Assembly: GCF_006345805.1 (NCBI RefSeq)
Contig: NC_042997.1
Location: 209,064,001 to 209,128,000, forward strand
Source: Octopus sinensis
Taxonomy: Eukaryota
DNA: 64,000 bases
Direction of reading: 5' to 3'
Shown here: piece by piece, positions 14,785-53,357 of the stretch
How positions within the stretch are numbered: position 1 is the first letter of the stretch
How the letters are laid out: every line of letters starts with the position of its first letter
The notes under the pieces: generated by a model
Databases searched by the model: none
Told to the model about the DNA's origin: nothing
The model's input: the letters and a program-made list of their open reading frames with translations, nothing else
Position numbers and translations under genes: made by a program

Positions 14785-15970
14785 TTTTCTCATCTGCAAG
14801 AACCCGTGTCACTGTGTGAACAAGCATCAGTTTTGTCGTTCCTGCGTCACCGTATGGTCGGGAAGCGGGGATTCTGAAAACCACAACAAATGCCCCGTGT
14901 GCCGTGTGAGCGGCTACTATCTACCGAGTGGTGCTATTGCAGACAACCTCAACAACAGGCAGGTGCGCTGCCTCCTCCGCTCCTGCATTTGGGTCGGTCA
15001 GCTGAAAAACATTCACAATCACCGTCATGTGCTCAACAAAAAACTACATCACGAAGACAATTACAAGACGAATAAGTCATGCAACCACAACAACAACAAT
15101 AATGATAGCAATAACAATAATTTGAATCTTAGGGACAGATGCTCTGAAATAACGGAGAGAGTTTTAGCGAAGGAACCCTCGTCAGCAGCAGCCCTCCTTC
15201 AAAGAATCCGGAATGAGAGGAAAGAAGCCAACTTGTCTTCAAATAATTTGTTCACCGAGGCCACCGCAACCACCACCACCCAATTGTCCCCTTTGTTAAC
15301 AACCCCTCGTACAGGGCTCAGTTCTAGAAATGTTTTATCTTCTAGCAGTTCAACACCAGTAACTAATACTACTACTAATAATAATAATATTACTGATAAT
15401 AATAATAGTAGTAGTTCTTTAGTTAGTCTTCAGCGCCACCACCCAACGCTTGACAACAACAACCGTGTGAATGAGAGAGCAAACGAGTCTATAGAGAGTG
15501 TCCTTCGTTCCTTCCTTCCTGCTACTACCACACATCCAACTCCTGTAAGTCGCCTTAATAATAATAATAATAGTAGTAGTAATAGTAGTAGCCTTTCTAG
15601 AAATGCTCTTCAAGCAAACACCACCCCACCATCCTCTGCTCCACCGGTTACTGAGCCCGATAATGTCACCACCAACCCCAACAATTCCAATCGTGTCGGT
15701 CCTATCCACCATCGCTCTGTAAATCGCCGAACTGGCCCCAAGGAATACGAACGGCTACGGGCTCGCATGAGGGAGACCCGTCTTCGACTGGAACAAATGG
15801 AGACCACTCGCCGCGAATTGGCTTCTTTCCAGGAGAGACAAAGACTCCAGCATTTGGTCGAGGTGCGAGAACTTGGTCGGCAGCTGAACGAAGTGACATT
15901 CCAAATCCGGCGCCTGCTTAACCAGATGAGTGCCAACGAGGATCATCCTCCCACCCAACTCGTCAATTAA
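14785..15970 (+). CDS. Terminal coding exon of a RING-HC (C3HC4) E3-ligase-like protein with TRAF/SINA-like Zn-finger remnant, N/T/S-rich linker and C-terminal coiled coil
   Basis: Polypyrimidine tract plus ttgcag acceptor at 14784. The frame reads (T)-FLICKNPCHCVNKHQFCRSCVTVW..CPVCRV, then VRCLLRSCIWVGQLKNIHNH, and ends with a heptad-like YERLRARMRETRLRLEQME..RLLNQM; TAA at 15968-15970. The first RING Cys pair must lie in an upstream exon that I could not locate. The ORF-track GTG start at 14816 is an artefact. Confidence 0.88.
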
Positions 15971-19399: not shown

Positions 19400-19778
19400 C
19401 TCTTTTACTTGTTTCAGTCATCTAACTGCGGCCATGCTGGAGCACCGCCTTTAGTCGAGCAAATCGACCCCAGTCCTTATTCTTTGTAAGCCTAGTACTT
19501 ATTCTATCAGTTTCTTTTGCCGAACCACTAAGTTACAGGGACATAAACACACCAGCATCAGTTGTCAAGCGATGTTGGGGGGACAAATATGGATGCACAA
19601 ACATACACATACATACATACGACAGGCTTCTTTCAGTTTCCGTCTACCAAATCCACTCACAAGGCTTTGGTCAGCCTGAGGCTATAGTGGAATATACCTC
19701 CCCAAGGTGCCACGCAGTAGGACTGAACCCAGAACCGTGTGGTTGGTAAGCAAGCTACTTACCACACAGCCACTCCTC
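19400..19778 (-). mobile_element. SINE-B
   Basis: Reverse complement of the same. Confidence 0.85.
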
Positions 19779-23461: not shown

Positions 23462-23815
23462 AGTGGTAAGTAGCTTGCTTACCAACCACATGGTTCTGGG
23501 TTCAGTCTAACTGCATGGCACCTTGGGCAAGTGTCTTCTACTATAGCCTCAGGCCAACCAAAGCCTTGTGAGTGGATTTGGTAGATGGAAACTGAAAGAA
23601 GCCCGTCATATATGTGTGTGTCTGTTTGTCCCTCCAACATCGCTTGACAACCGATGCTGGTGTGGTTATGTCCCCGTAACTTAGCGATTTGGCAAAAGAG
23701 ACCAATAGAATAAGTACTAGGCTTACAAAGAATAAACCCTGGGGTCGATTTGCTCAACGAAAGGCAGTGCTCCAGCATGGCCGCAGTCAGATGACTGAAA
23801 CAAGTAAAAGAGTAA
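23462..23815 (+). mobile_element. SINE-B
   Basis: Same motifs. Confidence 0.85.
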
Positions 23816-25424: not shown

Positions 25425-25963
25425 GGCATAGGAGTGGCTGTGTGGCAAGAAGTTTCAGCCTCACTGCATAGCACCTTGGGTAAATGTCTTCTATAGCCTT
25501 GAACCAATCAAAGCTTTGTAAGTGGGTTTGGTAGACGGAAACTGAAAGAAGCCACTTTGTATGTGTGTGTATATGTATATAGGCACTGGAGTGGCTGTGT
25601 GGTAAGAAGCTTGCTTCCCAACCACATGGCTCCAGGTTCAGTTCCACTGTGGCACCTTGGGCAAGTGTCTTCTATTATAGCCATGGGCCGACTAAAGCCC
25701 ATTTGGTAGACGGAAACTGAAAGAAGCCCATAGTATGCCTATATATGTGTGTGTGTATGTATTCATTTGTGTGTCTGTTTGTCCCCATCTCCCAACCACT
25801 GCTTGACAACCGATGTCCGTGTGTTTATGTCCCCATAACTTAGCAGTTTGGCAAAAGAGATGACAGAATAAGTACAAGGCTTACAAAGAATAAGTCCTGG
25901 GGGGTCAATTCGTTTGACTAAAGGCAGTGCTCCAGTATGGCCACAGTCAAATGACTGAAACAA

Positions 25964-25965
<2 letters not shown>
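25425..25965 (+). mobile_element. SINE-B with a duplicated head (two 5' parts in tandem)
   Basis: GGAGTGGCTGTGTGG at ~25431 and ~25589. Confidence 0.8.
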
Positions 25966-25966
<1 letters not shown>

Positions 25967-26009
<43 letters not shown>

Positions 26010-26292
26010 TATATATATATACACACACACACATATATATACACACACACACATATATATATATACACACACACACACATATATATACACACACACACAT
26101 ATATATATACACACACACACACACATATATATATACACACATATATATATATACACACACACACACATATATATATACACACACATATATATATATACAC
26201 ACACACACACATATATATACACACACACACATATATATATATACACACACACACACACATATATATACACACACACATATATACACACACAC

Positions 26293-26327
<35 letters not shown>

Positions 26328-26500
26328 TATATACACACACACACACACATATATATACACACACATATATATATATACACACACACATATATGTATATAT
26401 ATACACACACACATACATATAAATAAAAATATATGCATACATACAAACATACATGTACGTACCTACATCTACATGCATATATACATGCATATATAAATAT
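25967..26500. repeat. Compound (TA)n(CA)n microsatellite
   Basis: Direct inspection. Confidence 0.97.
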
Positions 26501-26504
26501 ATAT

Positions 26505-26915
26505 ATGTGAGTACAGGACACCACAACTAGACGTAGAACTCATCGAGAAACGAAAACGGAAAAACAAGCATGGAACAAACCATTTTTTTACAACAGAAAA
26601 ACAGAGTACAAGACAAACTACACAAGGAAAAATCCCCTTCATCAGCTGTCCCTAGTTTGACTCTAGCATGTTTCGAAGGTAAGACAGAACACGACTCGTC
26701 GAAACTAGCCCTTCCTGCGAGGGAATTAAAATAAAATTACTTCGCAGAGGGGTAAAAACAAGAAAGAAAAAAATAAAATGTAACACAAACAAGACGTAAA
26801 AACGATACAAATAAAAATACAAAATAAATTACAAGATAAAAGTACATGTACAAGAAAACACAATACGAGAAATAAAAATAAACAAGAAAACAAACGAAAA
26901 GGCCTTTTTCTGGCT
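26505..26915 (-). mobile_element. Interspersed element within a microsatellite, carrying hammerhead-like motifs
   Basis: Unique-complexity insert between two (CA/TA)n tracts; see findings. Confidence 0.45.
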
Positions 26916-26917
26916 TA

Positions 26918-26946
26918 GACACACACACACACACACATATATATAT

Positions 26947-26993
<47 letters not shown>

Positions 26994-27161
26994 TAAATAT
27001 ATATTATATACATACACACACATATACATATATATATATATATATACATACACACACACATATACATATATATATATATATATCATCACCATTGTTTATA
27101 TATATATACACACACACACATATATATACACACACACACACATACATACATATATATACAT

Positions 27162-27192
<31 letters not shown>

Positions 27193-27251
27193 CATACACA
27201 CACACACACACATATATATATATACATACATACACACACATATATATATAT

Positions 27252-27314
<63 letters not shown>

Positions 27315-27336
27315 CACACATATATATATATATATT
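26918..27336. repeat. Compound (CA)n(TA)n microsatellite
   Basis: Direct inspection. Confidence 0.97.
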
Positions 27337-28140
<804 letters not shown>

Positions 28141-29639: not shown

Positions 29640-30005
29640 GGCGTAGGAGTGGCTGTGTGGTAAGTAGCTTGCTTACCAACCACATGGTTCCGGGTTCAGT
29701 CCCACTGCGTGGGACCTTGGGCAAGTGTCTTCTACAATAGCCTTGTGAGTGGATTTGGTAGACGGAAACTGAAAGAAGCCCGTCGTATATATGTATATAT
29801 ATATGTATGTGTTTGTGTGTCTGTGTTTGTCCCCCCAACATCGCTTGACAACCGATGCTGGTGTTTATGTCGCCGTAACTTAGTGGTTCGGCAAAAGAGA
29901 CCGATAGAATAAGTACTAGGCTTACAAAGAATATGTCCTGGGGCCAATTTGTTTGACTAAAGGCGGTGCTCCAGCATGGCCGCAGTCAAATGACTGAAAC
30001 AAGTA
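29640..30005 (+). mobile_element. SINE-B
   Basis: Same motifs. Confidence 0.85.
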
Positions 30006-31552: not shown

Positions 31553-32139
31553 GAGAATTTTCTGGAAGTTATGAAGAAACAGGAGGTACACTTGTGTACA
31601 TATACCACTGGACCTCATTGTCATCAACACTTGGACAAGATTTTACCGGGTTTCCATGGCATGTAACTGACCGAATTCATCACATTCCATCGCAAAATGA
31701 CTCATTCACAGTTGCGTGAACTGGAGCGAAGTGAAATTAAAGTGTTCTTACTTAAAAACACAACGTGCCTCCGTCCAGGAAACGAAATCGTAGGATTGCA
31801 GTTTCGTTTCCTACGATTGTGAGTGCAACGCCCTAAGCATGAAGGCCATGCGTTTTCAAAAAGTGGACCACGACAGAATTTGAACTGAAAATGTAAGGAA
31901 CCAGATCAATTCTCCAACGATTCTGCTGATCCATCTCCTTTAGGTTGTATATATGAATTTAAATGCCCACAAGGGGCTAAACATAGCGGGGACAAACAAG
32001 AACAGACAAATGGACTCCAGTGCGTAACTGGTACTTAATTTATCGACCCCAAAAGGATGAAAGTCAAAGTCGGCGCGTGCTCACACTGACATACAGAAAA
32101 CGTGCACAGACACACACATACATATACCGGAGAGCACAA

Positions 32140-33370
32140 TAAAATTTAAAAAATAAAATAAAATAAATTAAATAAAAGATAAAATTAAAAAAATTTTTTT
32201 AATAAAATGAAATAAATAAAAATATAAAAAATAAAAAAAAAAAATATAAAAAATAAAATGAAATAAAAAGACAAAATTCAATAAAAATAAAATTTTAAAA
32301 ATAAATAAAATAAAAATTAAATAAATTAAATTAAATTTAAAAATAAATAAAATAAACTAAACTAAAAATAAAATTAAAAAATATAAAAACTTTAAATAAA
32401 ATAAAATTAAATTAAATTAAATTAAAATAAAAATAAAATTAAAAATAAATTTAATTTAATTTAATTTTTTTGTATTTTATTTTGCTTTATTTTTATTTTT
32501 CAAATTTTTTTTAGCTTTTTCATTTTATTTTTTAAATTTTATTTTTGTATTTTATTTTATTATTATTTTTTAAATTATTTAATTTTATTTTTTAAATTTT
32601 ATTTTATTTTAATTTTTTTCATTTTTTATTTTATTTTTATTTTCAAATTTTTACTTTTTTAAATTTATTTTTATTTCTTATTTTATTTTAATTCTTTGTT
32701 TATTTTTATCTTAATTTTATTTTTTCAAATTTTTTATTTTATTTCTAATTTTTGGTAATTTTAAAAATTTTTATTATATTTTGAAATTAAAATAAAATTT
32801 TAAAAAATAAAAAATAAAATTAAAAAAATAAAATAAAAATAAATAAAAAATAAAAATAAAATAAAAATAAAAAATTTTAAATTTAAAAAATAAAATAAAA
32901 TAAAAATTTAAAATAAAAATAAAATTAAAAAATGAAATTAAAATTTTTAAAAAAATGAAATTAAAATAAAATAAAATAATATAAAATTAAAATAAAAAAT
33001 AAAAAATAAAATATGAAATTAAATTAAATTAAAATAAAATAAATAAATTTTAAAAATAAAATTAAATTTTAAAAAAATTTTAATAAAAAATAAAATATGC
33101 AAAATATAGAAATAAATAAATAAAATAAAATATAAAAAATAAATAAATGTAAAAATAAATAAATAAAATATAAAATATAAATAAATAAAATAAAATAAAA
33201 TAATTTTTTTAATTTTTAAATAAAATAAAAAAATATAAAAAATAAAAAATGAAATAAAATTAAATTAAAAAATATAAATAAAATTGAAATAAAAAAAAAA
33301 AATTAAACTAAAATAATATAAAATCAAAATAATTTTTTTTTTAAATATAATAAAATAAAATAATATAACA
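32140..33370. repeat. Almost GC-free A/T tract built from AAATA/TAAAA-like units
   Basis: Only scattered G or C over ~1.2 kb. Confidence 0.95.
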
Positions 33371-33759
33371 TACATACATACATACAAACAAACAAACCCC
33401 CATGCAGGCGACGGATTGACACGAAACTGTAAGAACGCCAGACCGGGTGGATACCTTGTAGTATTGGGTCCAGCATTTTGATTTCAAACCCCGTCATGGC
33501 CAGCCTGGGTGGTGGACTTAATCGGCTACCCCGTTTAACACCACCACTCTCTGGCACTTTGGGTGTCTTCAGGCGAACATTGGGGCTGGGTTTTCGGTTT
33601 TTTATACAACTTTCAGACCATATTTGCATAACTACGACCGCGTAGTCAAGACCATGGAGATCCGGGTTCAAACCTATGGCGCGGATCTTCGGGCAAGCGT
33701 CTTCGACAGTCTCAATTTACTACCAACCTTGAAAGTGAAAACAGATAGATTGAATCTTT

Positions 33760-34085
33760 AACTGGCTCTCCGTCGGTTACGACGAGGGTCCCAGCTCATC
33801 CGACCAACGGAACAGCTTGCTCGTGAAATTAACATGCAAGTGGCTGAGCACTCCACAGACATGCATACACTTAACATAATTCTCAGGGAGATTCAGCATG
33901 ATACAGAGTGTGACAAGGCTGACCCTTTGAATTACTGGTACAACTTATTTGTGCCAGCTGAAGGATTGGAGCAACGGGAAACAAAACGTGTTGCTCAAGG
34001 AAAATGTGCCGCCAGGAATTGAACGCGTGACCTTATGGTCGTGAACCGAATATCCTAACTACTGAGTCACGCACCTTCACCAGAT
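33760..34085 (+). mobile_element. SINE-D 3' part (related copies at ~815-950, ~7910-8155, and ~9000-9235 partly inverted)
   Basis: Shared GAACAGCTTGCTCGTGAAATTAAC.TGCAAGTGGCTGAG.ACTCC..GTGTGACAAGGCTG. Confidence 0.7.
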
Positions 34086-34569: not shown

Positions 34570-34960
34570 TAGTGGCTGTGTGGTAAGTAGCTTGCTTACC
34601 AACCACATGGTTCCGGGTTCAGTCCCACTGCGTGGCACCTTGGGCAAGTATTTTCTACTATAGCCCCGGGCCGACCAAAGCCTTATGAGTGGATTTGGTA
34701 GACGGAAACTGAAAGAAGCTAGTCGTATATATGTATGTGTATATGTTTGTATGTCTGTGTTTGTCCCCACAACATCGCTTGACAACCGATGCTGGTGTGT
34801 TTACGTCCCCGTAACTTAGCAGTTCGGCAAAAGAGACCGATAGAATAAGTACTAGGCTTCTAAAGAATAAGTCCTGGGATATATTTGTTCGACTAAAAAA
34901 AAAGCCGGTGCTCCAGCATGGCCGTAGTCAAATGACTGACACCAGTAAAAGAGTAAAGAG
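34570..34960 (+). mobile_element. SINE-B
   Basis: Same motifs. Confidence 0.85.
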
Positions 34961-39254: not shown

Positions 39255-39735
39255 GCGGCGAGCTGGCAGAACCGTTAGCACGCTGGGCGAAATGCGTAGC
39301 CGTTACGTTCTGAGTTCAAATTCCGCCGAGGTCGACTTTGCCTTTTATCCTTTCGGGGTCGATAAATTAAGTACCAGTTACGCACTGGGGTCGATGTGAT
39401 CGACTTAATTCGTTTGTCCCCTCGGTACTTGTATCGCAGAGTGGTCCCGGTTTGCGCACACGCGCGTCCGCGCTAGCCAGACGTAGGCAGTCGATCCTAC
39501 GAGCTGACTGGCGCATGCACGATATATACTTGTATCGATATATATGTGTATACGATATATACTTGTATATATATGATACAAGTATATATCGTGCATGCGC
39601 CAGTCAGCTCGTAGGATCGACTGCCTACGTCTGGCTAGCGCGGACGCGCGTCTGCGTGTGTGCGCAAACCGGGACCACTCTGCTATACAAGTACCGTCCC
39701 CTCTATGTTTAGCCCCTTGTGGGCAATAAAGAAAT
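39255..39735 (+). mobile_element. SINE-C interrupted by the 39424 MITE
   Basis: Head, core and tail are contiguous once the MITE and one TSD are removed. Confidence 0.85.
39424..39695. mobile_element. MITE, 272 bp, ~113-bp TIRs, 8-bp TSD
   Basis: TSD GTCCCCTC at 39416-39423 and 39696-39703; termini GGTACTTGTAT..ATACAAGTACC; interrupts a SINE-C copy. Confidence 0.92.
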
Positions 39736-41129
39736 AGCTATAGAGCAAAACTGAATGCCTGGAGTCCTTTTAGAAGCGAGACAAGGAACTCGGTTGAACA
39801 TGGCTGCGACTACATTATATAAGTGACAATCGGACGTAGCAGAGAACGCTTGCTCGAGGGATCCGGTCTATTCAGCCACACAGACTGAACAGAGCTGTAA
39901 ACCAACCGTGTCGTTTGAGCCTACTCTGAGATGCAAAAGTGCACGTTTCAAACAACTGCTAATAAACATTCTACACTTTTAATGCAGGTAAGGGGAGGCC
40001 ATTTTCTTAGCTGATATAGTTTTTGTAAAGTAAAGAATATATTTTGTCTCAAAGTCAAAAATGTAATTTAAAAAACCTCACCACCACTACCCGCCCATAT
40101 TTTATGTTCACACACACGATGGGCTTTCGGTTTCCGTCTACCAAATCATCTCACAAGGTTTTGGTCAGCTCTGGGCTACCAAAAGAAATATTTGCCTAAA
40201 GCACCATGAAATAGGACTGAACCTGGAACCATTTGGTTGGTAAGCAAACTTCTCAGCACACACCCGCCTATACATTTAGATATTTCCTTTAGCCTATGGT
40301 AAGTAAAGTAGAATTAACAGTTTTGTGCACAGACAAGACAGAAACCGAGGGTGCATTCCGAATTTACAAATCAAAGTATGAAAGAAAAAACCATGGTCCA
40401 CGCAGCTTCTGTTACTTAAAAGGAAGGATCTTTGTGGGGACAGATATTCACCTGAGAACATTCGGGGCTTAAGTGAAATAATGAGATATCAAGCAGGAAC
40501 CGAACGCTTCCTGTATCTCAACGGTTATTAATTTAGTGACAGAACTAATTAGCAATTAAGACTATTGAAATACACACATCGATATCTGAAGTATTTGAGG
40601 ACAGGAAATGCAGGTGATGGAAAACAATGGGAGAGAAAGACAAAGATTTTAAAGATTCACCGAAATTATTTCTTGTTCATACAATTGGGAATGTAGTGTT
40701 GAATATTGTGGAAGGTTTCGGTGAAGAAAGTAAAACAAATGTAGCGAAGGTTTTAAAATGTTGTCCACTAAAATTGTTATCACCGAGAAATCGTTGCTAA
40801 GAGTTTTGATTGCATTTTTGGGGGGGTTTTTTCGCCAGATTAGAAACATCTGGTTTTAAACTTAGTATAAAAAGAAAATCGATTCCAGTACTTGTCTGGT
40901 ACTTTATTTTAGATCAACGCCTGAAGGATGGAAAGTGAAGATGGACAAAGATGATCAAACAGTTGTAGATTAAGAAAAATGAAATGTTAAAATTCCTGTA
41001 AATATCTTCAGTGGAATTCTTTTCCAAACAATGAGGTGAGGTGTATGGAGAGAAGAACCCAAAATATCATACAAACTTTAAAAATAAAAGAATTCTGCCA
41101 AGTCCGAATTTGAAATTTATAGAAAATAA

Positions 41130-41516
41130 TCAAACGTCTTTTGGTTTGGAATCAAATTTCTTTGGTTCATCCTTACAAATATCATTGGCATCATGAACTG
41201 GCAACGGCAAGATAAATCGAAGCGACAATTTCCTGAGACGTGTTAGGCTGACATAACGAATGATCTTCTTCTCACAAGATTTCGGTTCAAATAACTTCAA
41301 CTTAAATTCTTCGATTGAAATTAAGCAAGAAATTTTTTGAATAAAAGAAGACACTTTTGAGTTTTGGAATTTCCGTCCATAGCGACGAACTATTCTGCTG
41401 GGACGATAACGCTTTGCTTTTACTACTCCTTTCGGTCTTGTTCGTCTTTTTAATTTAGCAGCACTGTTCAAAGATTTTCCTGTAGAATCTATTGGTTGCT
41501 GCTTCCGGCTGACCAT
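41130..41516 (-). CDS. Highly divergent histone H3-like ORF (128 aa, intronless, very basic); gene or frame-preserved pseudogene
   Basis: gaaATGG start. K4, Q5, S10, T11 and G12 sit at the exact H3 positions; GVVKAKRYRPSRIVRRYGRKFQNS versus H3 [24 protein letters not shown]; IRY~LRF; C-x4-KK-x4-PKDV versus C110-x4-KR-x4-PKDI. An upstream in-frame ATG at 41588 would add 24 aa. Confidence 0.6.
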   Translation of the reverse strand: MVSRKQQPIDSTGKSLNSAAKLKRRTRPKGVVKAKRYRPSRIVRRYGRKFQNSKVSSFIQKISCLISIEEFKLKLFEPKSCEKKIIRYVSLTRLRKLSLRFILPLPVHDANDICKDEPKKFDSKPKDV

Positions 41517-43677
41517 TTCTCTAAACTGACCACAAACCTTAACAGGATAACCTTGATAAATTTCGTATTTTTTTTTTTTATCAATCATTGAAAATCATTT
41601 AAATAATAAATCGTTGACATTTGAAGTTAGTGTTGATAGGGAAAATCCATTTGATGCGGCAGGAATAAATAAAATTTATGCAACTAAAGTGTACCTGATA
41701 AAAGAAAGGTTACGGTTTCGAACAAAGCAAAAGTTCTTGTAAGTAATTCGACCGTTTATAAAATAGCCTGAAGGTGGCGCTGAACATCAGCTGAAACAGG
41801 GAAGCAGCGGACCAAGTACAATTCAGATTATATAAACTTATATTATTTAAAATTTATATATGTATATATATATTTAACATGTAGACTAGCGCAGATATGT
41901 AAAATGATTTATTATACACAAAAATAAGTTATTTTTCCATGTTGTTGGCTGTGAAACGATCGTAACTTTATGGATATCAACTGGTGAAATATATATATAT
42001 TGATCTCATACCTCCAGACTTTCTTTATATTCTGTGTGTGTGTGTAATGGTTAATTCGACAAAAATATTTTTAAATATATTTTTGTCGAACTAAGGTTGT
42101 GAATTATCAGAATTGTTACCATGCCGGACAAAATGCTTTGCAGCATTTGTTCCGACTTTACGTTCTGAGTTCAAATGCCTCCGCGATCGACTTTGCCTTC
42201 CATCCTTTGGGGTCGATAGAATAAATACCAGGTGAGCATGGACACCAGTGCTTGACTAGTCCTTATTCTATCGACCCCCACAACGATTCTGCCAGCTCAC
42301 CACTTTAATACTACTACTAATAATAATTATTTCTTTATTGACCTCAAAGGGTTTACATTAAGAAAACCATGGAAGACGGCAGAGGGCAAAACACTGAGTG
42401 TGTCAGTGTGTCAGTGTGAGGGTTTTGTGTGTAAACAGGTGTGACAAAAAATGTTGTAATAATATTTTAACAATGAGTATTTCTCAGCAGGGATGAGACG
42501 TTTGAGGGCTGCTCATGGGGAAAACCCCACAGAACCACGAATGCCCTGATTTCTAGGGCAGGTACCTTCTTTTCTCAGTTCCTTATCTTCGATTTACAGG
42601 TGTATGCTCAGGGGACAGGCTCATTCATTCACACCTTGCTCGCCATTCTCATCCACCTTTCTACAAAATGGCTAGAAGACAACACCTCCCTCTCCACCCT
42701 TATAATCTTCTTCAAGTGAAACTTGAAGGAATTTATGAAGGGTTGGCCAAAAAGGAAAGTGTTCGCCTTCAACTTCTTCAGTGTCACCCGCCATGACCAA
42801 CAGGCATAAAGAAACCGCTCGGCCTTCCGGGTTAAAAGAAGGCGGCGGGGCAGTCTTCATGATGGAATCAGTTGATAGCCGCATCCGTCACAAACACCCA
42901 TAGGTTCTCCGTTTTTATGGAGGACGGATGGATCTCCGTCGCTTTTAGCGATGAAAATTCAGTTTTTCGATCAGCTGAATTATCTTCTCTTTGAATTAAG
43001 TATTTCAGCGGTTGAGTATTCCGCAGACACGTTTACCATTAACGTAGTTCTCAGCAAGCATCAACGCAACAAAGTGTGTAACAAGACTGTAGCATTTGAA
43101 TTGCAGGTATGATGCACCCGACAGGCCTAAGGCGACGCGCAGTGGGATCACGTCATAGCTGCGAAGCGAACTACTTAAACCTTGGGCCATATTGAGTCTG
43201 GACACTTACAGAAAAGCTCACTTCTCGGTGTTTTAACTAAGATCAAAGGCTAGTTAGCAATTTGGAAAACTGTAATCACGATACGTACATCTATTTTCTT
43301 GAGTCACAATCCATCTCTCTCACTATGTATATACTTTTTTAATCCTTTACAAGTTTGTTATTAGATTGTGGCCATGCTGGGGCACCGCTTTGAAGAATTT
43401 TAGTCATCGGTGTCTCTTGCCGAAACGATAAGTTACGGGGACGCAAACACACCAACACCGGTTGCCAAGCACACACACACACATGTATATATACATATAG
43501 TAGGAATTTACAAAAAAAAAAAACGAAGACGGGTGTGTAAACAACAAGCAGGTGTAGTAGTTTAACGCTCGGGAAGTGAGAAAGTCTTTTACATTTCGAG
43601 TCTACGCTCTACGACAGAAAGAAACAGAAATAAACTGGGAAAGAAAAAAAGGTTTAGTGGCTAGCGACCAACCATGG

Positions 43678-43921: not shown

Positions 43922-45474
43922 CTAGCAGTATCGCCCGGCGTTGCTCGGGTTTGTAAGGGAAATAACTATATAAGCATTTTTAGAGAGTTATAGCCAAAAA
44001 ATAGCAAAAAAATGCATTAAAAATTGAAAAAAAATTAAGGTAAATTTTTTTTTAAATCGTTGACACATCGTAGATATTTTTAGAGAGTTACTTCCCTTAT
44101 ATAAAAGCGAAAAAATGCATTAAAATGGAAAAATATGATGGTAATTTTTTTTAAAATCGTAGACTCATCGTAGACGCACGCTAATACCCAGAAGGGCTCG
44201 ATATGAATCACGACTGTAAGATACCCGCTTTTGGTTAAACTGCACCGCAAAATGTGGGAGTAGTTAGGAATCTAAATCGTAGTAGACAGACACACAACTT
44301 CACTCTTATATAAAGATGCTTTTTTCAGTCATAGAGTTAGATTTATGAAGGTCTTCAGTAGAAAATCCTTCGAATTCTGACTCGCTGCTTGATATAATGA
44401 AATTCGTATCCATTTTTCGTCAGAATTACAAATTTTGAAAACACAATAGGAACAAATTTCAGAAAAAAATCTCCCATAATTCACGGAATTAAAATTACAC
44501 TTCGATTTTTGTACAAAACTGTAGTTGAAGTGTTTACGAAGTATAATACGTGTTTTCACGAATGTACTAAAGAGATTTGCTCTGATATTCTCATTTAAAT
44601 ATGAATAGGTAAATTCGGGCGGCTTGGTAACTATATATAAGTGTCGTCTGTTTATACATAAACACTGTTTCATACTGCAATTATATATACATATATCTAT
44701 ATATAATATTATATAATAAAATATATACAGAGTAAAATAAAAACCAATTTACCTTTTCTGTCCGTCCGTGTGTCTTTGCAAATGTGTTGGAATGATAAGT
44801 GAGTTGAGTTTTGGCGCCTTTTTTACTAATAACAAACACACACGTGTTTGTATGTAGTTGTATGTGTATGTAGTTGTATATGTATGTGTATGCGTGTGTG
44901 TGTGAGCAATGACACACACACACTCACGCACGGACACATGTACATCAATGCTTTCGGAGTGATATGTTAAAATATTAAGTTTTCTCGAATTTTGTCTTAA
45001 TTCGTGGTAAAATTGAAAGAAATTTTTTACGGCATCACCCACTGAAGTACTCTGAAAAATCTTAGGTAAATTCTAATTGAAGAAATTGTGTGAGGAGTAA
45101 ATGGTTATGTATTTATTTGTTTCTGTTTGCTGTGTATTTTTATTTTTTGAGTAGTGGTTTAAATACTTTCAGTTTAGTCTTCCTCAAATCACTCTGTCGC
45201 TATTTACTTTCATTTTATTCGTTGCACACTGTGTGTGTGCGTTTGCGTGTGGTGTAAACCAGACTAAGAAAAGCATTTGACACACACACAAGAATGTGAG
45301 TTTTCTGTAAATTTTGCTTAATTGGAGTTTAAATTTTAAAAACTGGACCTGGCATGACGCGATGCATTCTACTCTCAAAAATGCTAGGTAAATTGTAATT
45401 GAAGAAATCGTATATTGTAGATTTGTATAACTCCCAAAGGGAGGCAGATAAAATCTGCCTTTTATAATAAGAGA
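43922..45474 (-). mobile_element. Non-autonomous Helitron, long form
   Basis: Inserted between A and T; 5' TC; 3' CCCGAGCAACGCCGGG hairpin plus CTAG; no TSD. Confidence 0.8.
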
Positions 45475-45487
45475 TGTATATGTATAT

Positions 45488-45563
<76 letters not shown>

Positions 45564-45579
45564 GTATATATATATATGT

Positions 45580-45613
<34 letters not shown>

Positions 45614-45644
45614 GTATGTATATGTATGTATATATATATGTATG

Positions 45645-45676
<32 letters not shown>
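45475..45676. repeat. (TA)n/(TATG)n microsatellite separating the two Helitrons
   Basis: Direct inspection. Confidence 0.97.
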
Positions 45677-45677
<1 letters not shown>

Positions 45678-47178
45678 CTCTTATTATAAAAGGCAGATTT
45701 TATCTGCCTCCCTTTGGGAGTTATACAAATCTACAATATACGATTTCTTCAATTACAATTTACCTAGCATTTTTAAGAGTACAATGCATCGCGTCATGCC
45801 AGGTCCAGTTTTTAAAATTTAAACTCCAATTAAGCAAAATTTACAGAAAACTCACATTCTGGTGTGTGTGTCAAATGCTTTTCTTAATGTGGTTTACACC
45901 ACACGCAAACGCACACACACAATGTGCAACGAATAAAATGAAAGTAAATAGCGACAGAGTGATTTGAGGAACACTAAACTGAAAGTATTTAAACCACTAC
46001 TCAAAAAATAAAAAATTTCTTCAATTAGAATTTACCTAAGATTTTTCAGAGTACTTCAGTGGGTGATGCCATAAAAAATTTCTTTCAATTTTACCACGAA
46101 TTAAGACAAAATTCGAGAAAACTCAATATTTTAACATATCACTCCGAAAGCATTGATGTACATGTGTGCGTGCGTGAGTGTGTGTGTGTCATTGCTCACA
46201 CACACACGCATACACATACATATACAACTACATACACATACAACTACATACAAACACGTGTGTGTTTGTTATTAGTAAAAAAGGCGCCAAAACTCAACTC
46301 ACTTATCATTCCAACACATTTGCAAAGACACACGGACGGACAGAAAAGGTAAATTGGTTTTTATTTTACTCTGTATATATTTTATTATATAATATTATAT
46401 ATAGATATATGTATATATAATTGCAGTATGAAACAGTGTTTATGTATAAACAGACGACACTTATATATAGTTACCAAGCCGCCCGAATTTACCTATTCAT
46501 ATTTAAATGAGAATATCAGAGCAAATCTCTTTAGTACATTCGTGAAAACACGTATTATACTTCGTAAACACTTCAACTACAGTTTTGTACAAAAATCGAA
46601 GTGTAATTTTAATTCCGTGAATTATGGGAGATTTTTTTCCGAAATTTGTTCCTATTGTGTTTTCAAAATTTGTAATTCTGACAAAAAATGGATACCAATT
46701 TCATTATATCAAGCAGCGAGTCAGAATTCGAAGGATTTTCTATTGAAGACCTTCATAAATCTAACTCTATGACTGAAAAAAGCATCTTTATATAAGAGTG
46801 AAGTTGTGTGTCTGTCTACTACGATTTAGATTCCTAACTACTCCCACATTTTGCGGTGCAGTTTAACCAAAAGCGGGTATCTTATAGTCGTGATTCATAT
46901 CGAGCCCTTCTGGGTATTAGCGTGCGTCTACGATGAGTCTACGATTTTAAAAAAATTTACCATCATATTTTTCCATTTTAATGCATTTTTTTCGCTTTTA
47001 TATAAGGGAAGTAACTCTCTAAAAATATCTACGATGTGTCAACGATTTTAAAAAAAATTTACCTTAATTTCTTTTCAATTTTTAATGCATTTTTTTGCTA
47101 TTTTTTGGCTATAACTCTAAAAATGCTTATATAGTTATTTCCCTTACAAATCCGAGCAACGCCGGGCGAAACTGCTAG
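45677..47178 (+). mobile_element. Non-autonomous Helitron, long form (inverted partner of 43922-45474)
   Basis: A|TCTCTTATTATAAAAGG..GCAACGCCGGGCGAAACTGCTAG|T. Confidence 0.8.
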
Positions 47179-47310
<132 letters not shown>

Positions 47311-47744
47311 AATGACTTCTTTCAGTTTCTCTCTGCCAATCCACTCACAATGCTTTGGTGCCACGCATTGAGGCTGAACCCGGAACCATGTGGTTGGAAA
47401 GCAAACTTCTTACCGCACACACACACATATAACCTCTGCCGTTCCCAACCTACCAACATTTAAATGACTAACAACAACACCAACAAGATAAACGACTAAA
47501 ATAAAAACAATGACGTGAGATAATGTGGTAACCGAGTGCGTTTTAAAAGTTGAATGAAATCTCTTTGATCTTGCAAATTAACAAGAACAATATAAACACC
47601 GCCGCCGCCGCCACCGTCCGACACGAAGACCAGTGCAATTAACACCTCCCACTGCCACCAGATTTTGAGCAACTTACTAGCAACAATAATACTAGTACTA
47701 ATAGTACTTTGTAAGTACTTGGTATTTCGTTATACAACCATAAT

Positions 47745-49653: not shown

Positions 49654-52600
49654 TTAAATGTAAATTGTTTTTGAAAGTTTCTTGGGCCAATGCACTGTTC
49701 TGCCCGATTTTGTAACATACGGTGTGCTCGGGGCACCCGTTGACGGCGAGGGTGGTGTTGTAGGAGCCGGTGAAGGTGTTTGTGCAGGTGAAGGCGTTTG
49801 TGCAGGTGAAGGCGTTTGTGCAGGTGAAGGTGTTGTTAAAGGTGCATAGGTGGGTGTGTCAAGGTTGTCATCAAAAGATGAAGACGTCTCAAAATGTGCC
49901 TTTTTTAAACGGTCCACGGAAACGGTCTCCGAACGACCATTTATCTCAATCGTGAAAACCTTTGGTGTGCGAGAAAGCACACGAAAAGGTCCTTTATAGG
50001 GAGAAACAAGTGGGCCCTTCACAGAATCGTCCCGAACAAAAACATGCGACCAGGTGTTCATATCCGGTGGAAGATGGGACGGTGGAGATTGCTTTCTGGG
50101 AAGCATGGGCGGAAGGTTTGAAAAATATTCCCGCAGTCTGGTGACATAGGTCGCCGGATCATGGGGCGGGGAAGTGTCTGGCACCAACATCGTACCGGGC
50201 AATGCCAGTGTGGTACCATACAGCAGCTCTGCAGCAGAAAACCCCAGGTCTGCCTTGACAGCAGTCCGACAGCCGAGAAGCACAATGGGCAGAAATTCGA
50301 TCCAGGACTGTGGGTCCGAAGAGGCACGAAGAGCGGCCTTGAGCTGTCTATGGAACCGCTCAACCAATCCATTAGACGCTGGATGGTAGCTTGTGGTGTG
50401 GATATGGTGCATACCCAAAATTCGCGACAATTCGCGAAATAGCGAGGCCTCAAACTGTCGTCCACGATCAGTTGTCAATCGGGACGGGACTCCGAAGCGA
50501 GAAATCCAGTTTGAAACGAAAGCTCGCGCAACAGTCTCAGCAGAAATGTCTGCTATCGGAATGGCTTCTGGCCAGCGGGAGAAACGATCGACACAAGTTA
50601 ATAGATAAGAGAACCCGCGACTCACAGGCCATGGTCCAACCAGATCGATGTGGACATGGCGAAAACGGGCCTCCGTGGGGGGAAATTGTCCAAGCGGGGC
50701 ACGAACGTGCCGTTGAATCTTGGATCGTTGACACTTGGAGCAGGTGCGTGTCCAACAAGTAATTGTGCGACGCATATTCGGCCAGAAAAACCGAGCAGTG
50801 ATTAGTTTGAGGGTGGCAGCGATGCCAGGATGTGATAAGGAGTGCAGTGCTTCAAACACTGAGCGTTGATGGGTCTCAGGCACCAGTGGCCTGGGAGATC
50901 CAGTTGAAGTGTCACAAAGAATGGTGCCTTCGGCTGACGGAAGCGGAAGGTAGGAAAACTGGCAACAGGAGAACTTGGGAGAAGTTAAATCTAACGACGC
51001 CAAAGGTGGCTGCTCCTGCGATATGGCAGCTAAGTCGATAGCAGCAGGAGACGAAAGGGCGCAAACTGGAAGGCGAGAGAGAGCGTCAGCAGGAACGTTC
51101 TCTTTTCCAGGTATGTGTCGAATGTTGCTAGTAAATTGAGAGATAAAATCCAGGTGCCGAAAAGCACGGGGTGAGAGTTTGTCCGTTTTTGAAAACAGGG
51201 CAAACGTAAGGGGCTTGTGATCCGTATAGATCACAAAATCTCGCCCTTCAAGTTGATGCTGGAAATGACGAACCGATAGATAGATCGCTAGGAGCTCACG
51301 ATCAAAGGTGCTGTATCGTCGTTCAGCTGGTTGCAGTTGACGGGAAAAGAAGGCTAGAGGTCGAACATGGTCATCCACTGTGTGTTGTAACACAGCGCCA
51401 ATGGCAGTGTCCGATGCGTCCACAGTCAAAGAGAGAGAAGCACCAGGAACTGGATGTGCAAGCAAAGAAACAGAAGCCAGCTCCTTCTTAATGGACTCAA
51501 AGGCTGTCACTGCCTCAACAGAGAGGGTGACTTGACTGTCCTTTCTAGGAGAGTCCTTTAACAGCCTGGTGAGAGGTAGCAGCTTATCTGCACAACCGGG
51601 AATGAAGCGTCGGTAGAAATTGACCATCCCTAGATAATGCCTGAGCTGGCGCAAGGAAGTGGGGGGTGCGATGCGTTGAATGGCATCGACTTTTGACGAG
51701 AGGGGGCTGATTCCAGTCGAATCAATATGATGCCCTAGAAAATCTAGGGAAGAGCGTCCGAAAACACACTTGTCGGGGTTTATGCGTATGCTATACGCGC
51801 GAAGACGCTGGAAGAGTTGAGAAAGGTGCCGGAGATGATTTTCTCGTGTGTCGCTCGCAATGAGTATGTCATCGACATAGGCAAACACAAAATCAAGACC
51901 GCGAACAACCTCATCAATGAAACGCTGGAAGGTGCTAGTAGCATTCCGCAAACCGAAACTCATGTACAAAAACTCAAAACACCCAAACGGGGTAGTGATT
52001 GCAGTTTTTGGAACGTCGGCTGGGTTGACCGGTATTTGGTGGTAAGCGCGTATCAGATCGACCTTCGAAAAAATGGTACAACCATGGAGATTTGCTGTAA
52101 AGTCCCGGAGATTTCTAATCGGATAGCGATCGGCTATTGTGACGGCATTGAGGCGTCGATAGTCTCCAACCGGGCGAAAATCAGACTCGCCCTTTCGCGC
52201 CAAATGAAGGGGAGATGCCCATGGGCTGGTGGAGGGGCGTATAATGCCAAGTTGAAGCATGTGCTCAAACTCGGCTCTGGCCGTTTTAAGTCGGTCTGGC
52301 GCTAGGCGCCGGGGGCGTGAGAATACAGGTGGCCCATTGGTGGTGATGAAATGGAGGGTCGAGTGGGTAGGATTTTCCGGTTTAAAGGCAATGTCCACTA
52401 GCTCCGGAAATGAAACCAAAAGAGAGTGAAATGGGTCTCCAGAGGTGGCAACAAAGAATGTCGGGCTAAGGACCGCAGTGGTGGAACTCCCAGTCGGTGT
52501 AGAGAGCGACGTCGTGCTATCAAGAAGCCTCCGACGCCTGACATCCACCAATAGGTTAAACCTATCCAGGAAATCAGCGCCGAGAATAGGATGTGGGATG

Positions 52601-52884
52601 TCAGCGATGACGAAAACCCATCGAAAATCTCGACGAAGGTTGAGGTTGAGGCGCAGCGAAACCTGACCGTAAGTGGTTATGGGAGACGAGTCAATAGCAT
52701 GCAAGACAATCGAAGAGCGCTTGGGCTTGTCTGCAGCCAGACGAAGGGGCCAGATGCTGCAACAGGAGCCGGTGTCTACCATGAAGAATGTCTTCGACAC
52801 CAGATCTTTTACATAGAATGCACGATGTTTGGGAAACGAGATGGAAGAAGGTGACGTGCTCACCTCCTCCGGATTTAGTTTTCC
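49654..52884 (-). CDS. pol: Pol polyprotein: aspartic protease, RT, RNase H, integrase
   Basis: FMVDTGS; FAYVDDILI; DAS..TDHKPL; HSLSH..CSKC with HIDL/TDRG/VERFH; no stops. It lies in the -1 frame relative to gag at GGAAAAC-TAA (52884-52875), so the ORF-track start at 52914 is not a real start. Confidence 0.95.
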
Positions 52885-53357
52885 GAGGGCTTGAAAGTGC
52901 ACGGCTGGGTACACCGATCTGCCCTTTTGGTAGAGCGACTACGACTGCGTTGTCGGCGCTCGATCGCACGGGATAGATCGTCGATTCGCCGCGTGAGCGC
53001 ATCAATCCGCTCGGCTAGTGAAATTTGCGCAGGGCCCCCTATACATGCACAGAGGCCTCGCGATGGAGATGGATTCGGAAATTCCAGTATTCCATCGGCC
53101 ATCGTGGCAATCTGAATATTGCTCTCCCCCGAACGTGTGTTGCGGCGGAGGATTTCTGCTTTCACAGACGCGTATGTGGCATCCGGGTGGGGACTTATTA
53201 TTAGATCCCTGATCGATGCGGCGAGTCGGGGATGTAAGCCGGAATATAGCAGGTGCAACTGCTGCTGTGGAGAAATGGCATGTGCATCAAAATACCACTC
53301 CACTTGGGCAAACCACAGGCCCATATCCCCCGTAAATGAAGGCAAACCTGAAGCCAT
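52875..53357 (-). CDS. gag: Gag (short, apparently internally deleted)
   Basis: [30 protein letters not shown]-terminal motif and RSRSRS..CTQPCTF tail; only 160 aa. Confidence 0.82.

What the first reader, a model, noticed from the sequence alone, without database searches (positions are those of the whole stretch)
41130..41516. Extremely divergent histone H3-like intronless ORF
Seen: a 128-codon open frame in AT-rich DNA with good start context. K4-Q5 and S10-T11-G12 sit at exact H3 positions. There is a gap-free match to the H3 RYRP/alphaN segment (RYRPSRIVRRYGRKFQNS vs [18 protein letters not shown]), IRY for loop-1 LRF, and C..KK..PKDV with the same spacing as C110..KR..PKDI. K9 is D and K36 is V, loop 1 is longer, alpha2 contains prolines, and the end of alpha3 is lost to a stop. 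No histone stem-loop follows the stop. Known: H3 is among the most conserved proteins, and CenH3 variants usually keep the fold and lose the tail, which is roughly the opposite of this pattern. Inference: a lineage-specific H3-derived protein (germline or sperm chromatin variant, or tail mimic), or a pseudogene. An alternative frame inside alpha2 reads QE-IVASI-YL (H3: QE-ASEA-YL), hinting at compensated frameshifts.
Basis: partly seen in the sequence, partly recalled or inferred. Interest (0 to 1): 0.82.

Follow-up and report, generated by a model that had tools for sequence, protein, structure and literature searches.

The report
Conserved octopus orphan ORF, weakly H3-like
A 128-codon gene-like reading frame in the Octopus vulgaris genome is kept intact and under protein-level selection in a second octopod, but its likeness to histone H3 is confined to the first ~60 residues, is only borderline significant, and includes no detectable histone fold.

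Summary
The ORF is real. It lies on the minus strand, from ATG 41516 to TGA 41132-41130, and encodes 128 aa. The window is Octopus vulgaris chromosome OX597814.1.

One relative exists in about 5.8 billion proteins: a 146-aa ORF on a 1.6-kb Logan contig that is colinear with window 41834-40219. In that relative the frame, start and stop are conserved, and the only two indels are 3 and 6 nt. Amino-acid changes are fewer than expected from permuting the observed substitutions (30 against 40.7±3.1, P≈0.001), and only in this frame. dN/dS is about 0.3-0.5. It is therefore not a decaying pseudogene.

The H3 likeness is weak:
- Pfam gives no hit.
- PDB searches list only H3-family chains among the 60 shown, at E=0.03-0.1.
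- hhalign gives 18.6% probability.
- All the signal is in residues ~14-65 (H3 tail, alphaN, start of alpha1).
- The histone-fold half is at chance level (p=0.03 and p=0.7).
- Its landmarks (C110, PKD, the Y of IRY) and K4, Q5 and G12 are lost in the relative.
- AlphaFold2 gives no confident fold.

My verdict is a taxonomically restricted small basic protein gene. Descent of its N-terminus from H3 is possible (about 30%) but unproven. It is not a nucleosomal H3 variant.

The parts
41130..41516 (-). 128-codon ORF plus TGA stop (protein P0001). It is basic (pI 10.6, 35 K+R and 11 D+E). Start and stop codons are conserved in the relative.
   Evidence: selection tests
41322..41477 (-). Residues 14-65. 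This is the only stretch that aligns to histone H3 (H3 ~19-69: distal tail, RYRP, alphaN, start of alpha1).
   Evidence: phmmer and hmmsearch against PDB, E 0.03-0.1; hhalign columns 14-54; shuffle p 4e-5 and 4e-4
41403..41456 (-). Residues 21-38, KLKRRTRPKGVVKAKRYR. Two basic clusters about 10 residues apart, resembling a bipartite nuclear localisation signal. This is inference from the sequence only.
   Evidence: Sequence; nearly invariant between the two proteins
41133..41342 (-). Residues 59-128, the C-terminal half. It has no significant H3 similarity but is as constrained as the N-terminal half (omega 0.32 against 0.36).
41517..41588 (-). In-frame upstream extension to ATG 41588 (giving a 152-aa ORF). 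It is open in both species but only 70% identical, with no third-position excess (9/6/6) and a weak start context. It is probably 5'UTR. A 5-codon uORF starts at 41598.
41591..41834 (-). Conserved non-coding block upstream of the ORF (86-90% identity, above the synonymous-site level). It shows no codon periodicity (12/9/10) and has stops in all frames. It contains TATAAA at 41760-41755. Candidate promoter and 5'UTR.
40903..40908 (-). AATAAA 222 nt after the stop codon, conserved in the relative. Candidate poly(A) signal (inference).
40219..41834 (-). Whole block colinear with contig L001 of the second species (73% nt identity overall). It is bounded by an (AC)n run and a SINE-like repeat.

Best explanation
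This is an intronless, taxonomically restricted (octopod) protein-coding gene for a ~15-kDa basic protein. It is maintained by moderate purifying selection.

The protein has two halves:
- A highly basic, probably disordered N-terminal half (19 K/R and 1 acidic residue in 58) that carries a bipartite-NLS-like cluster.
- A mixed-charge C-terminal half with short amphipathic helices.

The most likely mode of action is inferred, not shown. The protein would enter the nucleus and bind nucleic acid or chromatin through the basic half, while the C-terminal helices would mediate protein contacts.

It is not a histone-fold protein and should not form H3-H4 dimers or nucleosomes. Its likeness to H3 is confined to residues ~14-65 and is statistically borderline. 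That stretch may be a remnant of an H3 tail and alphaN segment, or it may be a chance or compositional resemblance. The present data do not decide between these.
For: Shown:
- The ORF exists and was called as a 128-aa gene on O. vulgaris OX597814.1.
- One relative, P0002, is 73-75% identical. It sits on a contig colinear with window 41834-40219, flanks included, so it is the same locus in another species.
- Start ATG and stop TGA are at the same positions. The only indels in the 384-nt ORF are 3 and 6 nt. The flanks carry 22 indels, 17 of them not multiples of 3.
- Substitutions by codon position are 17/18/31.
- dN/dS is 0.32 by NG86, 0.38 by ML and 0.49 by LWL85.
- Re-dealing the observed substitutions over same-base sites gives 40.7±3.1 amino-acid changes against 30 observed. 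P=6e-4, or 1.2e-3 when conditioned on an open frame. The other two frames give P=0.21 and 0.78.
- Both halves are equally constrained.
- The upstream non-coding block is more conserved than synonymous sites and contains a TATAAA.
- No homologue exists elsewhere: the word-indexed search of 5.8 billion proteins was run twice, and the exhaustive HMMER search of 1.84 billion representatives once.

Against a histone fold:
- Pfam gives none at E<=10.
- The fold half is at chance level.
- hhalign aligns only columns 14-54.
- AF2 gives pLDDT 52.9 and pTM 0.17, with five short helices and no long alpha2.
- Foldseek finds nothing.
Against: - There is no evidence of expression or translation. I could not establish the library type or the species of the Logan runs.
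- The selection test rests on a single species pair. YN00 gave omega 0.74.
- Four upstream ATGs, including a short uORF, lie between the TATA-like box and the start codon. That would hamper scanning if the transcript starts there.
- The 90%-identity cluster of P0001 has one member. No near-identical protein from a close relative such as O. sinensis has therefore been annotated in the searched collection.
- The flanking non-coding DNA is about as conserved as the ORF. Part of the conservation may therefore be non-coding constraint.
- The proposed nuclear nucleic-acid-binding role is inferred from composition alone.
Confidence: 0.55

Rival explanations
1. H3-derived orphan. The N-terminal ~65 residues truly descend from a histone H3 gene (distal tail, RYRP, alphaN, start of alpha1). 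The source could be one of the many expanded canonical H3 copies of cephalopods. The histone fold was then replaced or remodelled beyond recognition, leaving a tail-and-alphaN protein that could bind DNA or H3-tail or alphaN partners. This rival is compatible with the gene being real. It differs from the best explanation only on ancestry.
For: - All 60 listed PDB matches in each search are H3-family chains. This holds for P0001 (E 0.099), P0002 on its own (E 0.033) and their profile (E 0.031, slightly better than either protein alone).
- A reversed control and two half-wise shuffled controls gave 0 hits, 0 hits and 1 hit at E=1.3.
- Shuffle p is 4e-5 and 4e-4 for the N-terminal part.
- KRYRPSRIVR, YGRK and SSFIQKISCLI are invariant between the two species.
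- At several sites where the two proteins differ, one of them carries the H3 residue: F/Y50, N/K52, S/P53, V/T55.
- The alignment is colinear from Met1, and length and charge distribution are similar: 128 against 136 aa, and 19 K/R with 1 acidic residue against 18 and 1 in the first 58.
- Canonical histone genes are expanded in cephalopods (PMC12210499).
Against: - No search reaches significance: Pfam none, hhalign probability 18.6%, and no H3 at E<=1e-3 in 1.84 billion proteins.
- The finding was selected because it looks like H3, so an E of ~0.03 is less impressive than it seems.
- Two incompatible N-terminal alignments both give 'matches'. With a gap, K4/Q5/S10/T11/G12 line up. Without a gap, SRK aligns to ARK9 and RKSL to RKQL. 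Chance matches are therefore easy in K/R/S/T-rich sequence.
- K4, Q5 and G12 are not conserved.
- No intermediate sequences exist.
- There is no stem-loop and no other histone gene in the 64 kb.
Confidence: 0.3
2. Non-functional chance ORF. The block 40.2-41.8 kb is conserved non-coding DNA (a regulatory element or lncRNA) that happens to be open for 128 codons in both species. The protein-level constraint is a statistical accident.
For: - The flanks are as conserved as the ORF: upstream 86%, ORF 83%.
- There are several upstream ATGs.
- No expression data are available and no annotated orthologue exists in other octopods.
- P(frame stays open) under neutrality is not tiny, at 0.045-0.19.
- YN00 omega is 0.74.
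- A genome of this size should hold thousands of chance ORFs of this length.
Against: - The deficit of amino-acid changes has P~0.001 and is specific to this frame.
- There is a third-position excess of substitutions.
- Both indels are in frame while most flank indels are not.
- Start and stop codons are conserved.
- The conserved upstream block shows no such periodicity, so the signal is not a general property of the region.
Confidence: 0.15
3. Decaying histone H3 pseudogene (an orphon or retrocopy) drifting neutrally.
For: It has weak H3-like residues along the whole length, is intronless, lacks the end of alpha3, and has an alternative-frame QE..AS..YL string.
Against: - The frame is intact in two species at dS~0.4, omega is below 1, and the indels are in frame.
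- Neutral decay to 27% identity would have destroyed the frame.
- Frameshift-tolerant alignment adds no score.
- The alternative-frame string is not conserved, and the differences are synonymous in the main frame.
Confidence: 0.03
4. Bona fide nucleosomal H3 variant (CenH3-like, or a germline or sperm H3) that still adopts a histone fold and pairs with H4.
For: Length and charge resemble H3. phmmer of P0002 extends a weak alignment to a Cse4 chimera through residues 9-113.
Against: - Pfam Histone gives no hit.
- The fold half is at chance level.
- Prolines sit in the alpha2 equivalent (LPLPV), and alpha3 is truncated.
- AF2 gives no long alpha2 and low confidence.
- The pattern (tail-like part kept, fold lost) is the reverse of CenH3.
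Confidence: 0.02

Closest known systems
Histone H3 (canonical H3.1/H3.2/H3.3), N-terminal tail plus alphaN
   Same: Both are basic proteins of ~130 aa encoded by an intronless ORF. Residues 14-65 align to H3 19-69. An invariant RYRP sits at the equivalent place, followed by R..R.(F/Y)Q(N/K)S and (F/L)I(Q/R)K(I/L). H3-family chains are the only matches among the 60 best shown in each PDB search.
   Different: - Identity is 27% overall and there is no Pfam Histone match.
- No similarity is detectable in alpha1-L1-alpha2-L2-alpha3.
- The ARTK and ARKS motifs are absent, with D at K9 and V at K36.
- Prolines lie in the alpha2 equivalent and the protein ends before alpha3 is complete.
- There is no 3' stem-loop.
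- Omega is 0.3-0.5, where canonical H3 is nearly invariant (general knowledge).
- It is not in a histone cluster.
CenH3 / CENP-A / Cse4 and other fast-evolving H3 variants (H3.Y, H3t, H3mm)
   Same: These are rapidly evolving relatives of H3 that can be lineage-specific. A Cse4 chimera is the single best PDB hit for P0002 (E 0.033).
   Different: Those variants keep a clearly detectable histone fold and vary the tail. Here the only H3-like part is the tail and alphaN region, and the fold is undetectable.
Taxonomically restricted (orphan) small protein genes
   Same: There is no homologue outside a narrow clade. The gene is short and intronless, the protein is low-complexity or disordered and basic, omega is moderate, and the structure prediction is poor.
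   Different: It shows a borderline resemblance to a known protein, which is unusual for a purely de novo gene. Expression is not yet shown.
Sperm nuclear basic proteins and protamine-like proteins of molluscs, and cellular or viral histone-tail mimics
   Same: These are small, very basic nuclear proteins. The mimics copy short histone-tail motifs (general knowledge).
   Different: Molluscan protamine-like proteins derive from H1 and are far richer in Arg and Lys. Known mimics copy ARKS- or ARTK-type motifs, which are absent or unconserved here. No tissue data are available.

Membership tests
Histone H3 / core histone fold (Pfam PF00125) | Significant match to the Histone profile | tested here: not met
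   hmmscan against Pfam-A gave 0 families at E<=10 for both the 128-aa and the 152-aa versions. The best PDB E is 0.03. hhalign probability is 18.6%.
Histone H3 / core histone fold (Pfam PF00125) | alpha1-L1-alpha2-L2-alpha3 histone fold | tested here: not met
   Residues 59-128 against H3 64-136 give shuffle p=0.03 (P0001) and 0.7 (P0002). AF2 gives pLDDT 52.9 and pTM 0.17 with only short helices. Foldseek finds no match. The structural part is weak evidence because the alignment has only 2 sequences.
Histone H3 / core histone fold (Pfam PF00125) | Conserved tail motifs (A1-R2-T3-K4, ARKS at K9 and K27, K36) | tested here: not met
   K9 is D, K36 is V, and there is no ARKS. K4/Q5/G12 are present in P0001 but are R/P/R in P0002. 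Only S10-T11 are shared.
Histone H3 / core histone fold (Pfam PF00125) | RYRPGT-alphaN segment | tested here: inconclusive
   RYRP is invariant in both proteins, 8 of 18 residues are identical to H3 40-57, and the N-terminal part gives p 4e-5 and 4e-4. Database E is still only 0.03-0.1.
Histone H3 / core histone fold (Pfam PF00125) | Heterodimerisation with H4 and nucleosome incorporation | not testable with these tools
This needs AlphaFold-Multimer or refolding with H4.
Replication-dependent histone gene | 3' histone stem-loop (Rfam RF00032) and location in a histone cluster | tested here: not met
   No RF00032 match in 39500-43000 at E<=1. tblastn finds no H4, H2A, H2B or second H3 in the 64 kb.
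CenH3 / CENP-A | Recognisable histone fold with a longer loop 1 or CATD, and a divergent tail | tested here: not met
   The fold is not detectable. The similarity pattern is the reverse: the tail and alphaN are kept.
H3 pseudogene | Neutral evolution (omega ~1) and disrupted frames in relatives | tested here: not met
   The frame is intact, the indels are in frame, omega is 0.3-0.5, and P~0.001.
Taxonomically restricted (orphan) protein-coding gene | No detectable homologue outside a narrow clade | tested here: met
   Only P0001 and P0002 were found in 5.8 billion proteins. Only the query's own cluster was found in 1.84 billion representatives.
Taxonomically restricted (orphan) protein-coding gene | ORF conserved with protein-level purifying selection | tested here: met
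   (one species pair only)
Taxonomically restricted (orphan) protein-coding gene | Transcribed and translated | not testable with these tools
   No RNA-seq or proteomics access. The library type of SRR11869384/90/91/94 is unknown.

The most novel reading that the evidence does not exclude
An octopod-specific protein under selection whose N-terminal ~65 residues descend from the histone H3 tail and alphaN, but which has lost the histone fold. It would be a free-standing 'histone tail plus DNA-entry-site helix' protein. Such a protein could compete with nucleosomal H3 for DNA or for tail and alphaN-binding factors. No histone derivative of this kind is known to me.
Probability: 0.25. Interest if true: 0.65.

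Novelty: new member of a known kind. Interest (0 to 1): 0.3.

Why it matters
If the gene is expressed, it adds a selectively maintained, lineage-restricted small basic protein to the octopus gene set. Standard annotation apparently missed it in related species.

If the H3 ancestry of its N-terminus were confirmed, it would be a rare case of a core histone giving rise to a non-histone-fold protein. That would bear on how the expanded cephalopod histone repertoire generates novelty.

As it stands, the main value is a correction. This is not an 'extremely divergent H3' in the structural sense, and it is not a pseudogene.

Tried and rejected
- **Pfam scan** of the 128-aa and 152-aa versions gave nothing.
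- **Exhaustive HMMER profile search** of 1.84 billion proteins, plus two word-indexed searches of 5.8 billion, found no further relatives and no bridge to H3.
- **AlphaFold2** on the 2-sequence alignment gave a low-confidence model. Foldseek against PDB on that model found nothing, and the result means little given the poor model.
- **Frameshift-tolerant protein-to-DNA alignment** to H3 scored the same with and without frameshifts (89 and 89). I therefore rejected 'compensated frameshifts'.
- **Other histone genes or a stem-loop nearby:** none found.
- **Rfam on the conserved upstream block:** only noise, snoR113 at E 0.86. Codon periodicity and six-frame translation show that the block is non-coding.
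- **Longer 152-aa ORF from ATG 41588:** rejected as the coding start. It has 70% identity, no third-position excess and a weak start context.
- **Species and library type of the Logan runs:** literature searches found nothing relevant.
- **TE-encoded ORF:** rejected. The locus is single-copy in the window apart from a terminal SINE-like fragment, and the protein has one copy in the collection.
- **Comparator caveat:** They are consistent with the PDB H3 chains that the searches returned.

Full report
**What is there**

The feature is on the minus strand. An ATG at 41516-41514, with G at -3 and G at +4, opens a frame of 128 codons that ends at TGA 41132-41130. The frame stays open upstream to an ATG at 41588, which gives 152 aa. 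Local GC is 0.34.

The protein is MVSRKQQPIDSTGKSLNSAAKLKRRTRPKGVVKAKRYRPSRIVRRYGRKFQNSKVSSFIQKISCLISIEEFKLKLFEPKSCEKKIIRYVSLTRLRKLSLRFILPLPVHDANDICKDEPKKFDSKPKDV. Its pI is 10.6. The first 58 residues hold 19 K/R and 1 acidic residue, much like H3 with 18 and 1.

Markov-1 simulations of the surrounding 14 kb expect 0.05 ATG-ORFs of this length. That is locally unusual but not meaningful on a genome scale.

**Source**

The identical 128-aa protein is a called gene on NCBI GCA_951406725.2, record OX597814.1 (225.7 Mb), at about 0.56-0.58 Mb. Papers that cite this accession identify it as the Octopus vulgaris chromosome-level assembly (10.1101/2023.05.16.540928).

**Relatives**

A word-indexed search of about 5.8 billion proteins found one relative. 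This is P0002, 146 aa and 70-75% identical, present on four nearly identical ~1.65-kb Logan contigs from runs SRR11869384, SRR11869390, SRR11869391 and SRR11869394.

Searching again with the two-sequence profile found nothing more. An exhaustive HMMER search of 1.84 billion cluster representatives found only the query's own cluster. The family is therefore restricted to a narrow clade, as far as these collections show.

I could not determine the second species or its library type.

**Same locus in another species**

Contig L001 aligns colinearly with window 41834-40219, flanks included, at 73% identity. It ends in an (AC)n run on one side and a SINE-like repeat on the other. Identity by segment is as follows:

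| Segment | Coordinates | Identity |
|---|---|---|
| Upstream block | 41834-41589 | 86% |
| In-frame extension | 41588-41517 | 70% |
| ORF | 41516-41133 | 83% |
| Downstream | 41129-40219 | 73% |

**Is it coding?**

Several independent signs say yes.
- The start ATG and stop TGA are at identical positions in both species.
- The only indels in the ORF are 3 and 6 nt. The flanks carry 22 indels, 17 of which are not multiples of three, and at about three times the density.
- Substitutions fall 17/18/31 on codon positions 1, 2 and 3.
- dN/dS is 0.32 by NG86, 0.38 by ML and 0.49 by LWL85. YN00 gives 0.74.
- I re-dealt the observed set of substitutions over sites with the same base. That gives 40.7±3.1 amino-acid changes against 30 observed, P=6e-4, or P=1.2e-3 when conditioned on the frame staying open. 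The same test in the two other frames gives P=0.21 and 0.78.
- Both halves of the protein are equally constrained, with omega 0.36 and 0.32.

The controls behave differently. The conserved upstream block has no codon periodicity (12/9/10) and has stops in every frame in one species or the other, so it is non-coding. The 72-nt in-frame extension shows no third-position excess (9/6/6) and has a poor start context. ATG 41516 is therefore the likely start.

Two candidate signals are conserved: TATAAA at 41760-41755 and AATAAA at 40908-40903. Their function is inferred. The pseudogene reading is thus contradicted.

The caveats are these:
- The test rests on one species pair.
- There are no expression data.
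- Four upstream ATGs lie between the TATA-like box and the start codon.
- No near-identical protein from a close relative sits in the same 90% cluster.

**Is it H3?**

The searches give weak and consistent results.
- Pfam-A gives no family at E<=10.
- phmmer against PDB lists only H3-family chains among the 60 best shown, with best E=0.099 at 16 bits, covering query 14-65 against H3 19-69.
- P0002 on its own also hits only H3-family chains in its list, best E=0.033. The two-sequence profile gives E=0.031.
- A reversed copy gave 0 hits, and two copies shuffled within each half gave 0 hits and 1 hit at E=1.3. The E-values are therefore not obviously inflated by composition.
- hhalign of the pair against a small H3/CENP-A alignment gives P=0.0013 and 18.6% probability, over 41 columns only.
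- tblastn of H3 against the window gives one colinear hit, H3 1-125, at 26.7% identity and E=4.9e-4 for 64 kb without composition correction. No other histone gene is present.

Splitting the protein locates the signal. Residues 1-58 against H3 1-63 give p~4e-5 for P0001 and 4e-4 for P0002. Residues 59-128 against the histone fold give p=0.03 and 0.7.

The fold-region 'landmarks' are not conserved in P0002. C becomes S, PKD becomes QKN, and IRY becomes IRN. Nor are K4, Q5 and G12, which become R, P and R. RYRPSRIVR, YGRK and SSFIQKISCLI are invariant.

At least one set of matches must therefore be chance.

Structure and nearby sequence add nothing in favour of a histone.
- AlphaFold2 gives pLDDT 52.9 and pTM 0.17, with five short helices and no long alpha2. 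Foldseek finds nothing.
- There is no histone stem-loop.
- Frameshift-tolerant alignment gains nothing.
- The substitutions that turn the alternative-frame QEIVAS into PEIVSS in L001 are synonymous in the real frame, AGG to CGG and TCG to TCT. Selection therefore acts on the real frame.

**Interpretation**

The best-supported reading is a taxonomically restricted, intronless gene for a small basic protein under moderate purifying selection.

By inference from composition, the basic N-terminal half targets the protein to the nucleus and binds nucleic acid. It contains KLKRR, then about 10 residues, then KAKRYR, which resembles a bipartite NLS. The constrained C-terminal half provides another function, perhaps protein contacts.

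It is not a histone-fold protein by any test available here.

Whether residues ~14-65 descend from H3 remains open. The match is consistent, colinear and slightly stronger with the profile. Cephalopods also have expanded canonical histone genes (PMC12210499). On the other hand the match is sub-threshold everywhere, and the finding was chosen precisely for this resemblance. I put H3 ancestry of the N-terminus at about 0.3, a nucleosomal H3 variant at about 0.02, a pseudogene at about 0.03, and a non-functional chance ORF at about 0.15.

**Novelty and score**

As an orphan small ORF with one-pair evidence of selection, this is a new member of a known kind and of modest interest. If H3 ancestry were proven, a fold-less tail-and-alphaN derivative under selection would be an unusual histone offshoot.

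Noticed in passing
window 44110-46991: A ~2.9-kb near-perfect palindrome. The outer arms 44110-45087 and 46014-46991 are 99% complementary. The inner arms 45137-45575 and 45576-46014 are 94% complementary with no spacer. A 157-aa ORF at 45494-45967(+) spans the centre and has no Pfam hit. It could be a foldback element or a long-read assembly artefact.
   Followed up: partly
window 49654-52914 (-): A 1086-aa ORF with RVT_1, RNase H and integrase domains. This is a Ty3/gypsy-type LTR retrotransposon pol. The GC-rich stretch at 48-54 kb matches it.
   Followed up: partly
window 40219-40272, 47376-47431, 29651-29697, 34574-34620, 19725-19771, 23463-23503: A ~50-nt segment is repeated at least six times at 81-85% identity, in both orientations. 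It also forms the end of the Logan contigs, so it is probably the end of a SINE-like element shared by both species. ARAGORN finds no tRNA in the window.
   Followed up: partly
window 41591-41834: A non-coding block upstream of the ORF is more conserved (86-90%) than the ORF's synonymous sites or the downstream flank. It contains TATAAA and two splice-acceptor-like motifs (tttcag at ~41796-41791 and ttttatcag at ~41700-41692). It could be a promoter and 5'UTR, or an independent conserved non-coding element.
   Followed up: partly
window 39500-39650: A TA-rich hairpin-forming repeat gives many miRNA-family hits on both strands, all below the gathering scores. I read these as a low-complexity artefact, not a miRNA gene.
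   Followed up: no
window 32001-34000 and 26001-28000: GC falls to 0.20 at 32-34 kb. There are strong skews at 26-28 kb (GC skew -0.36, AT skew +0.22). Simple or satellite repeats are likely. Overlapping ORFs on both strands at 25918-26526 fit a repeat.
   Followed up: no
window 14816-15970 (+): A 384-aa ORF, the longest outside the retrotransposon, has only a weak sub-threshold RING-finger match (E 0.0021, 18.3 bits against a cut-off of 21). It could be an exon or a repeat-encoded ORF.
   Followed up: no
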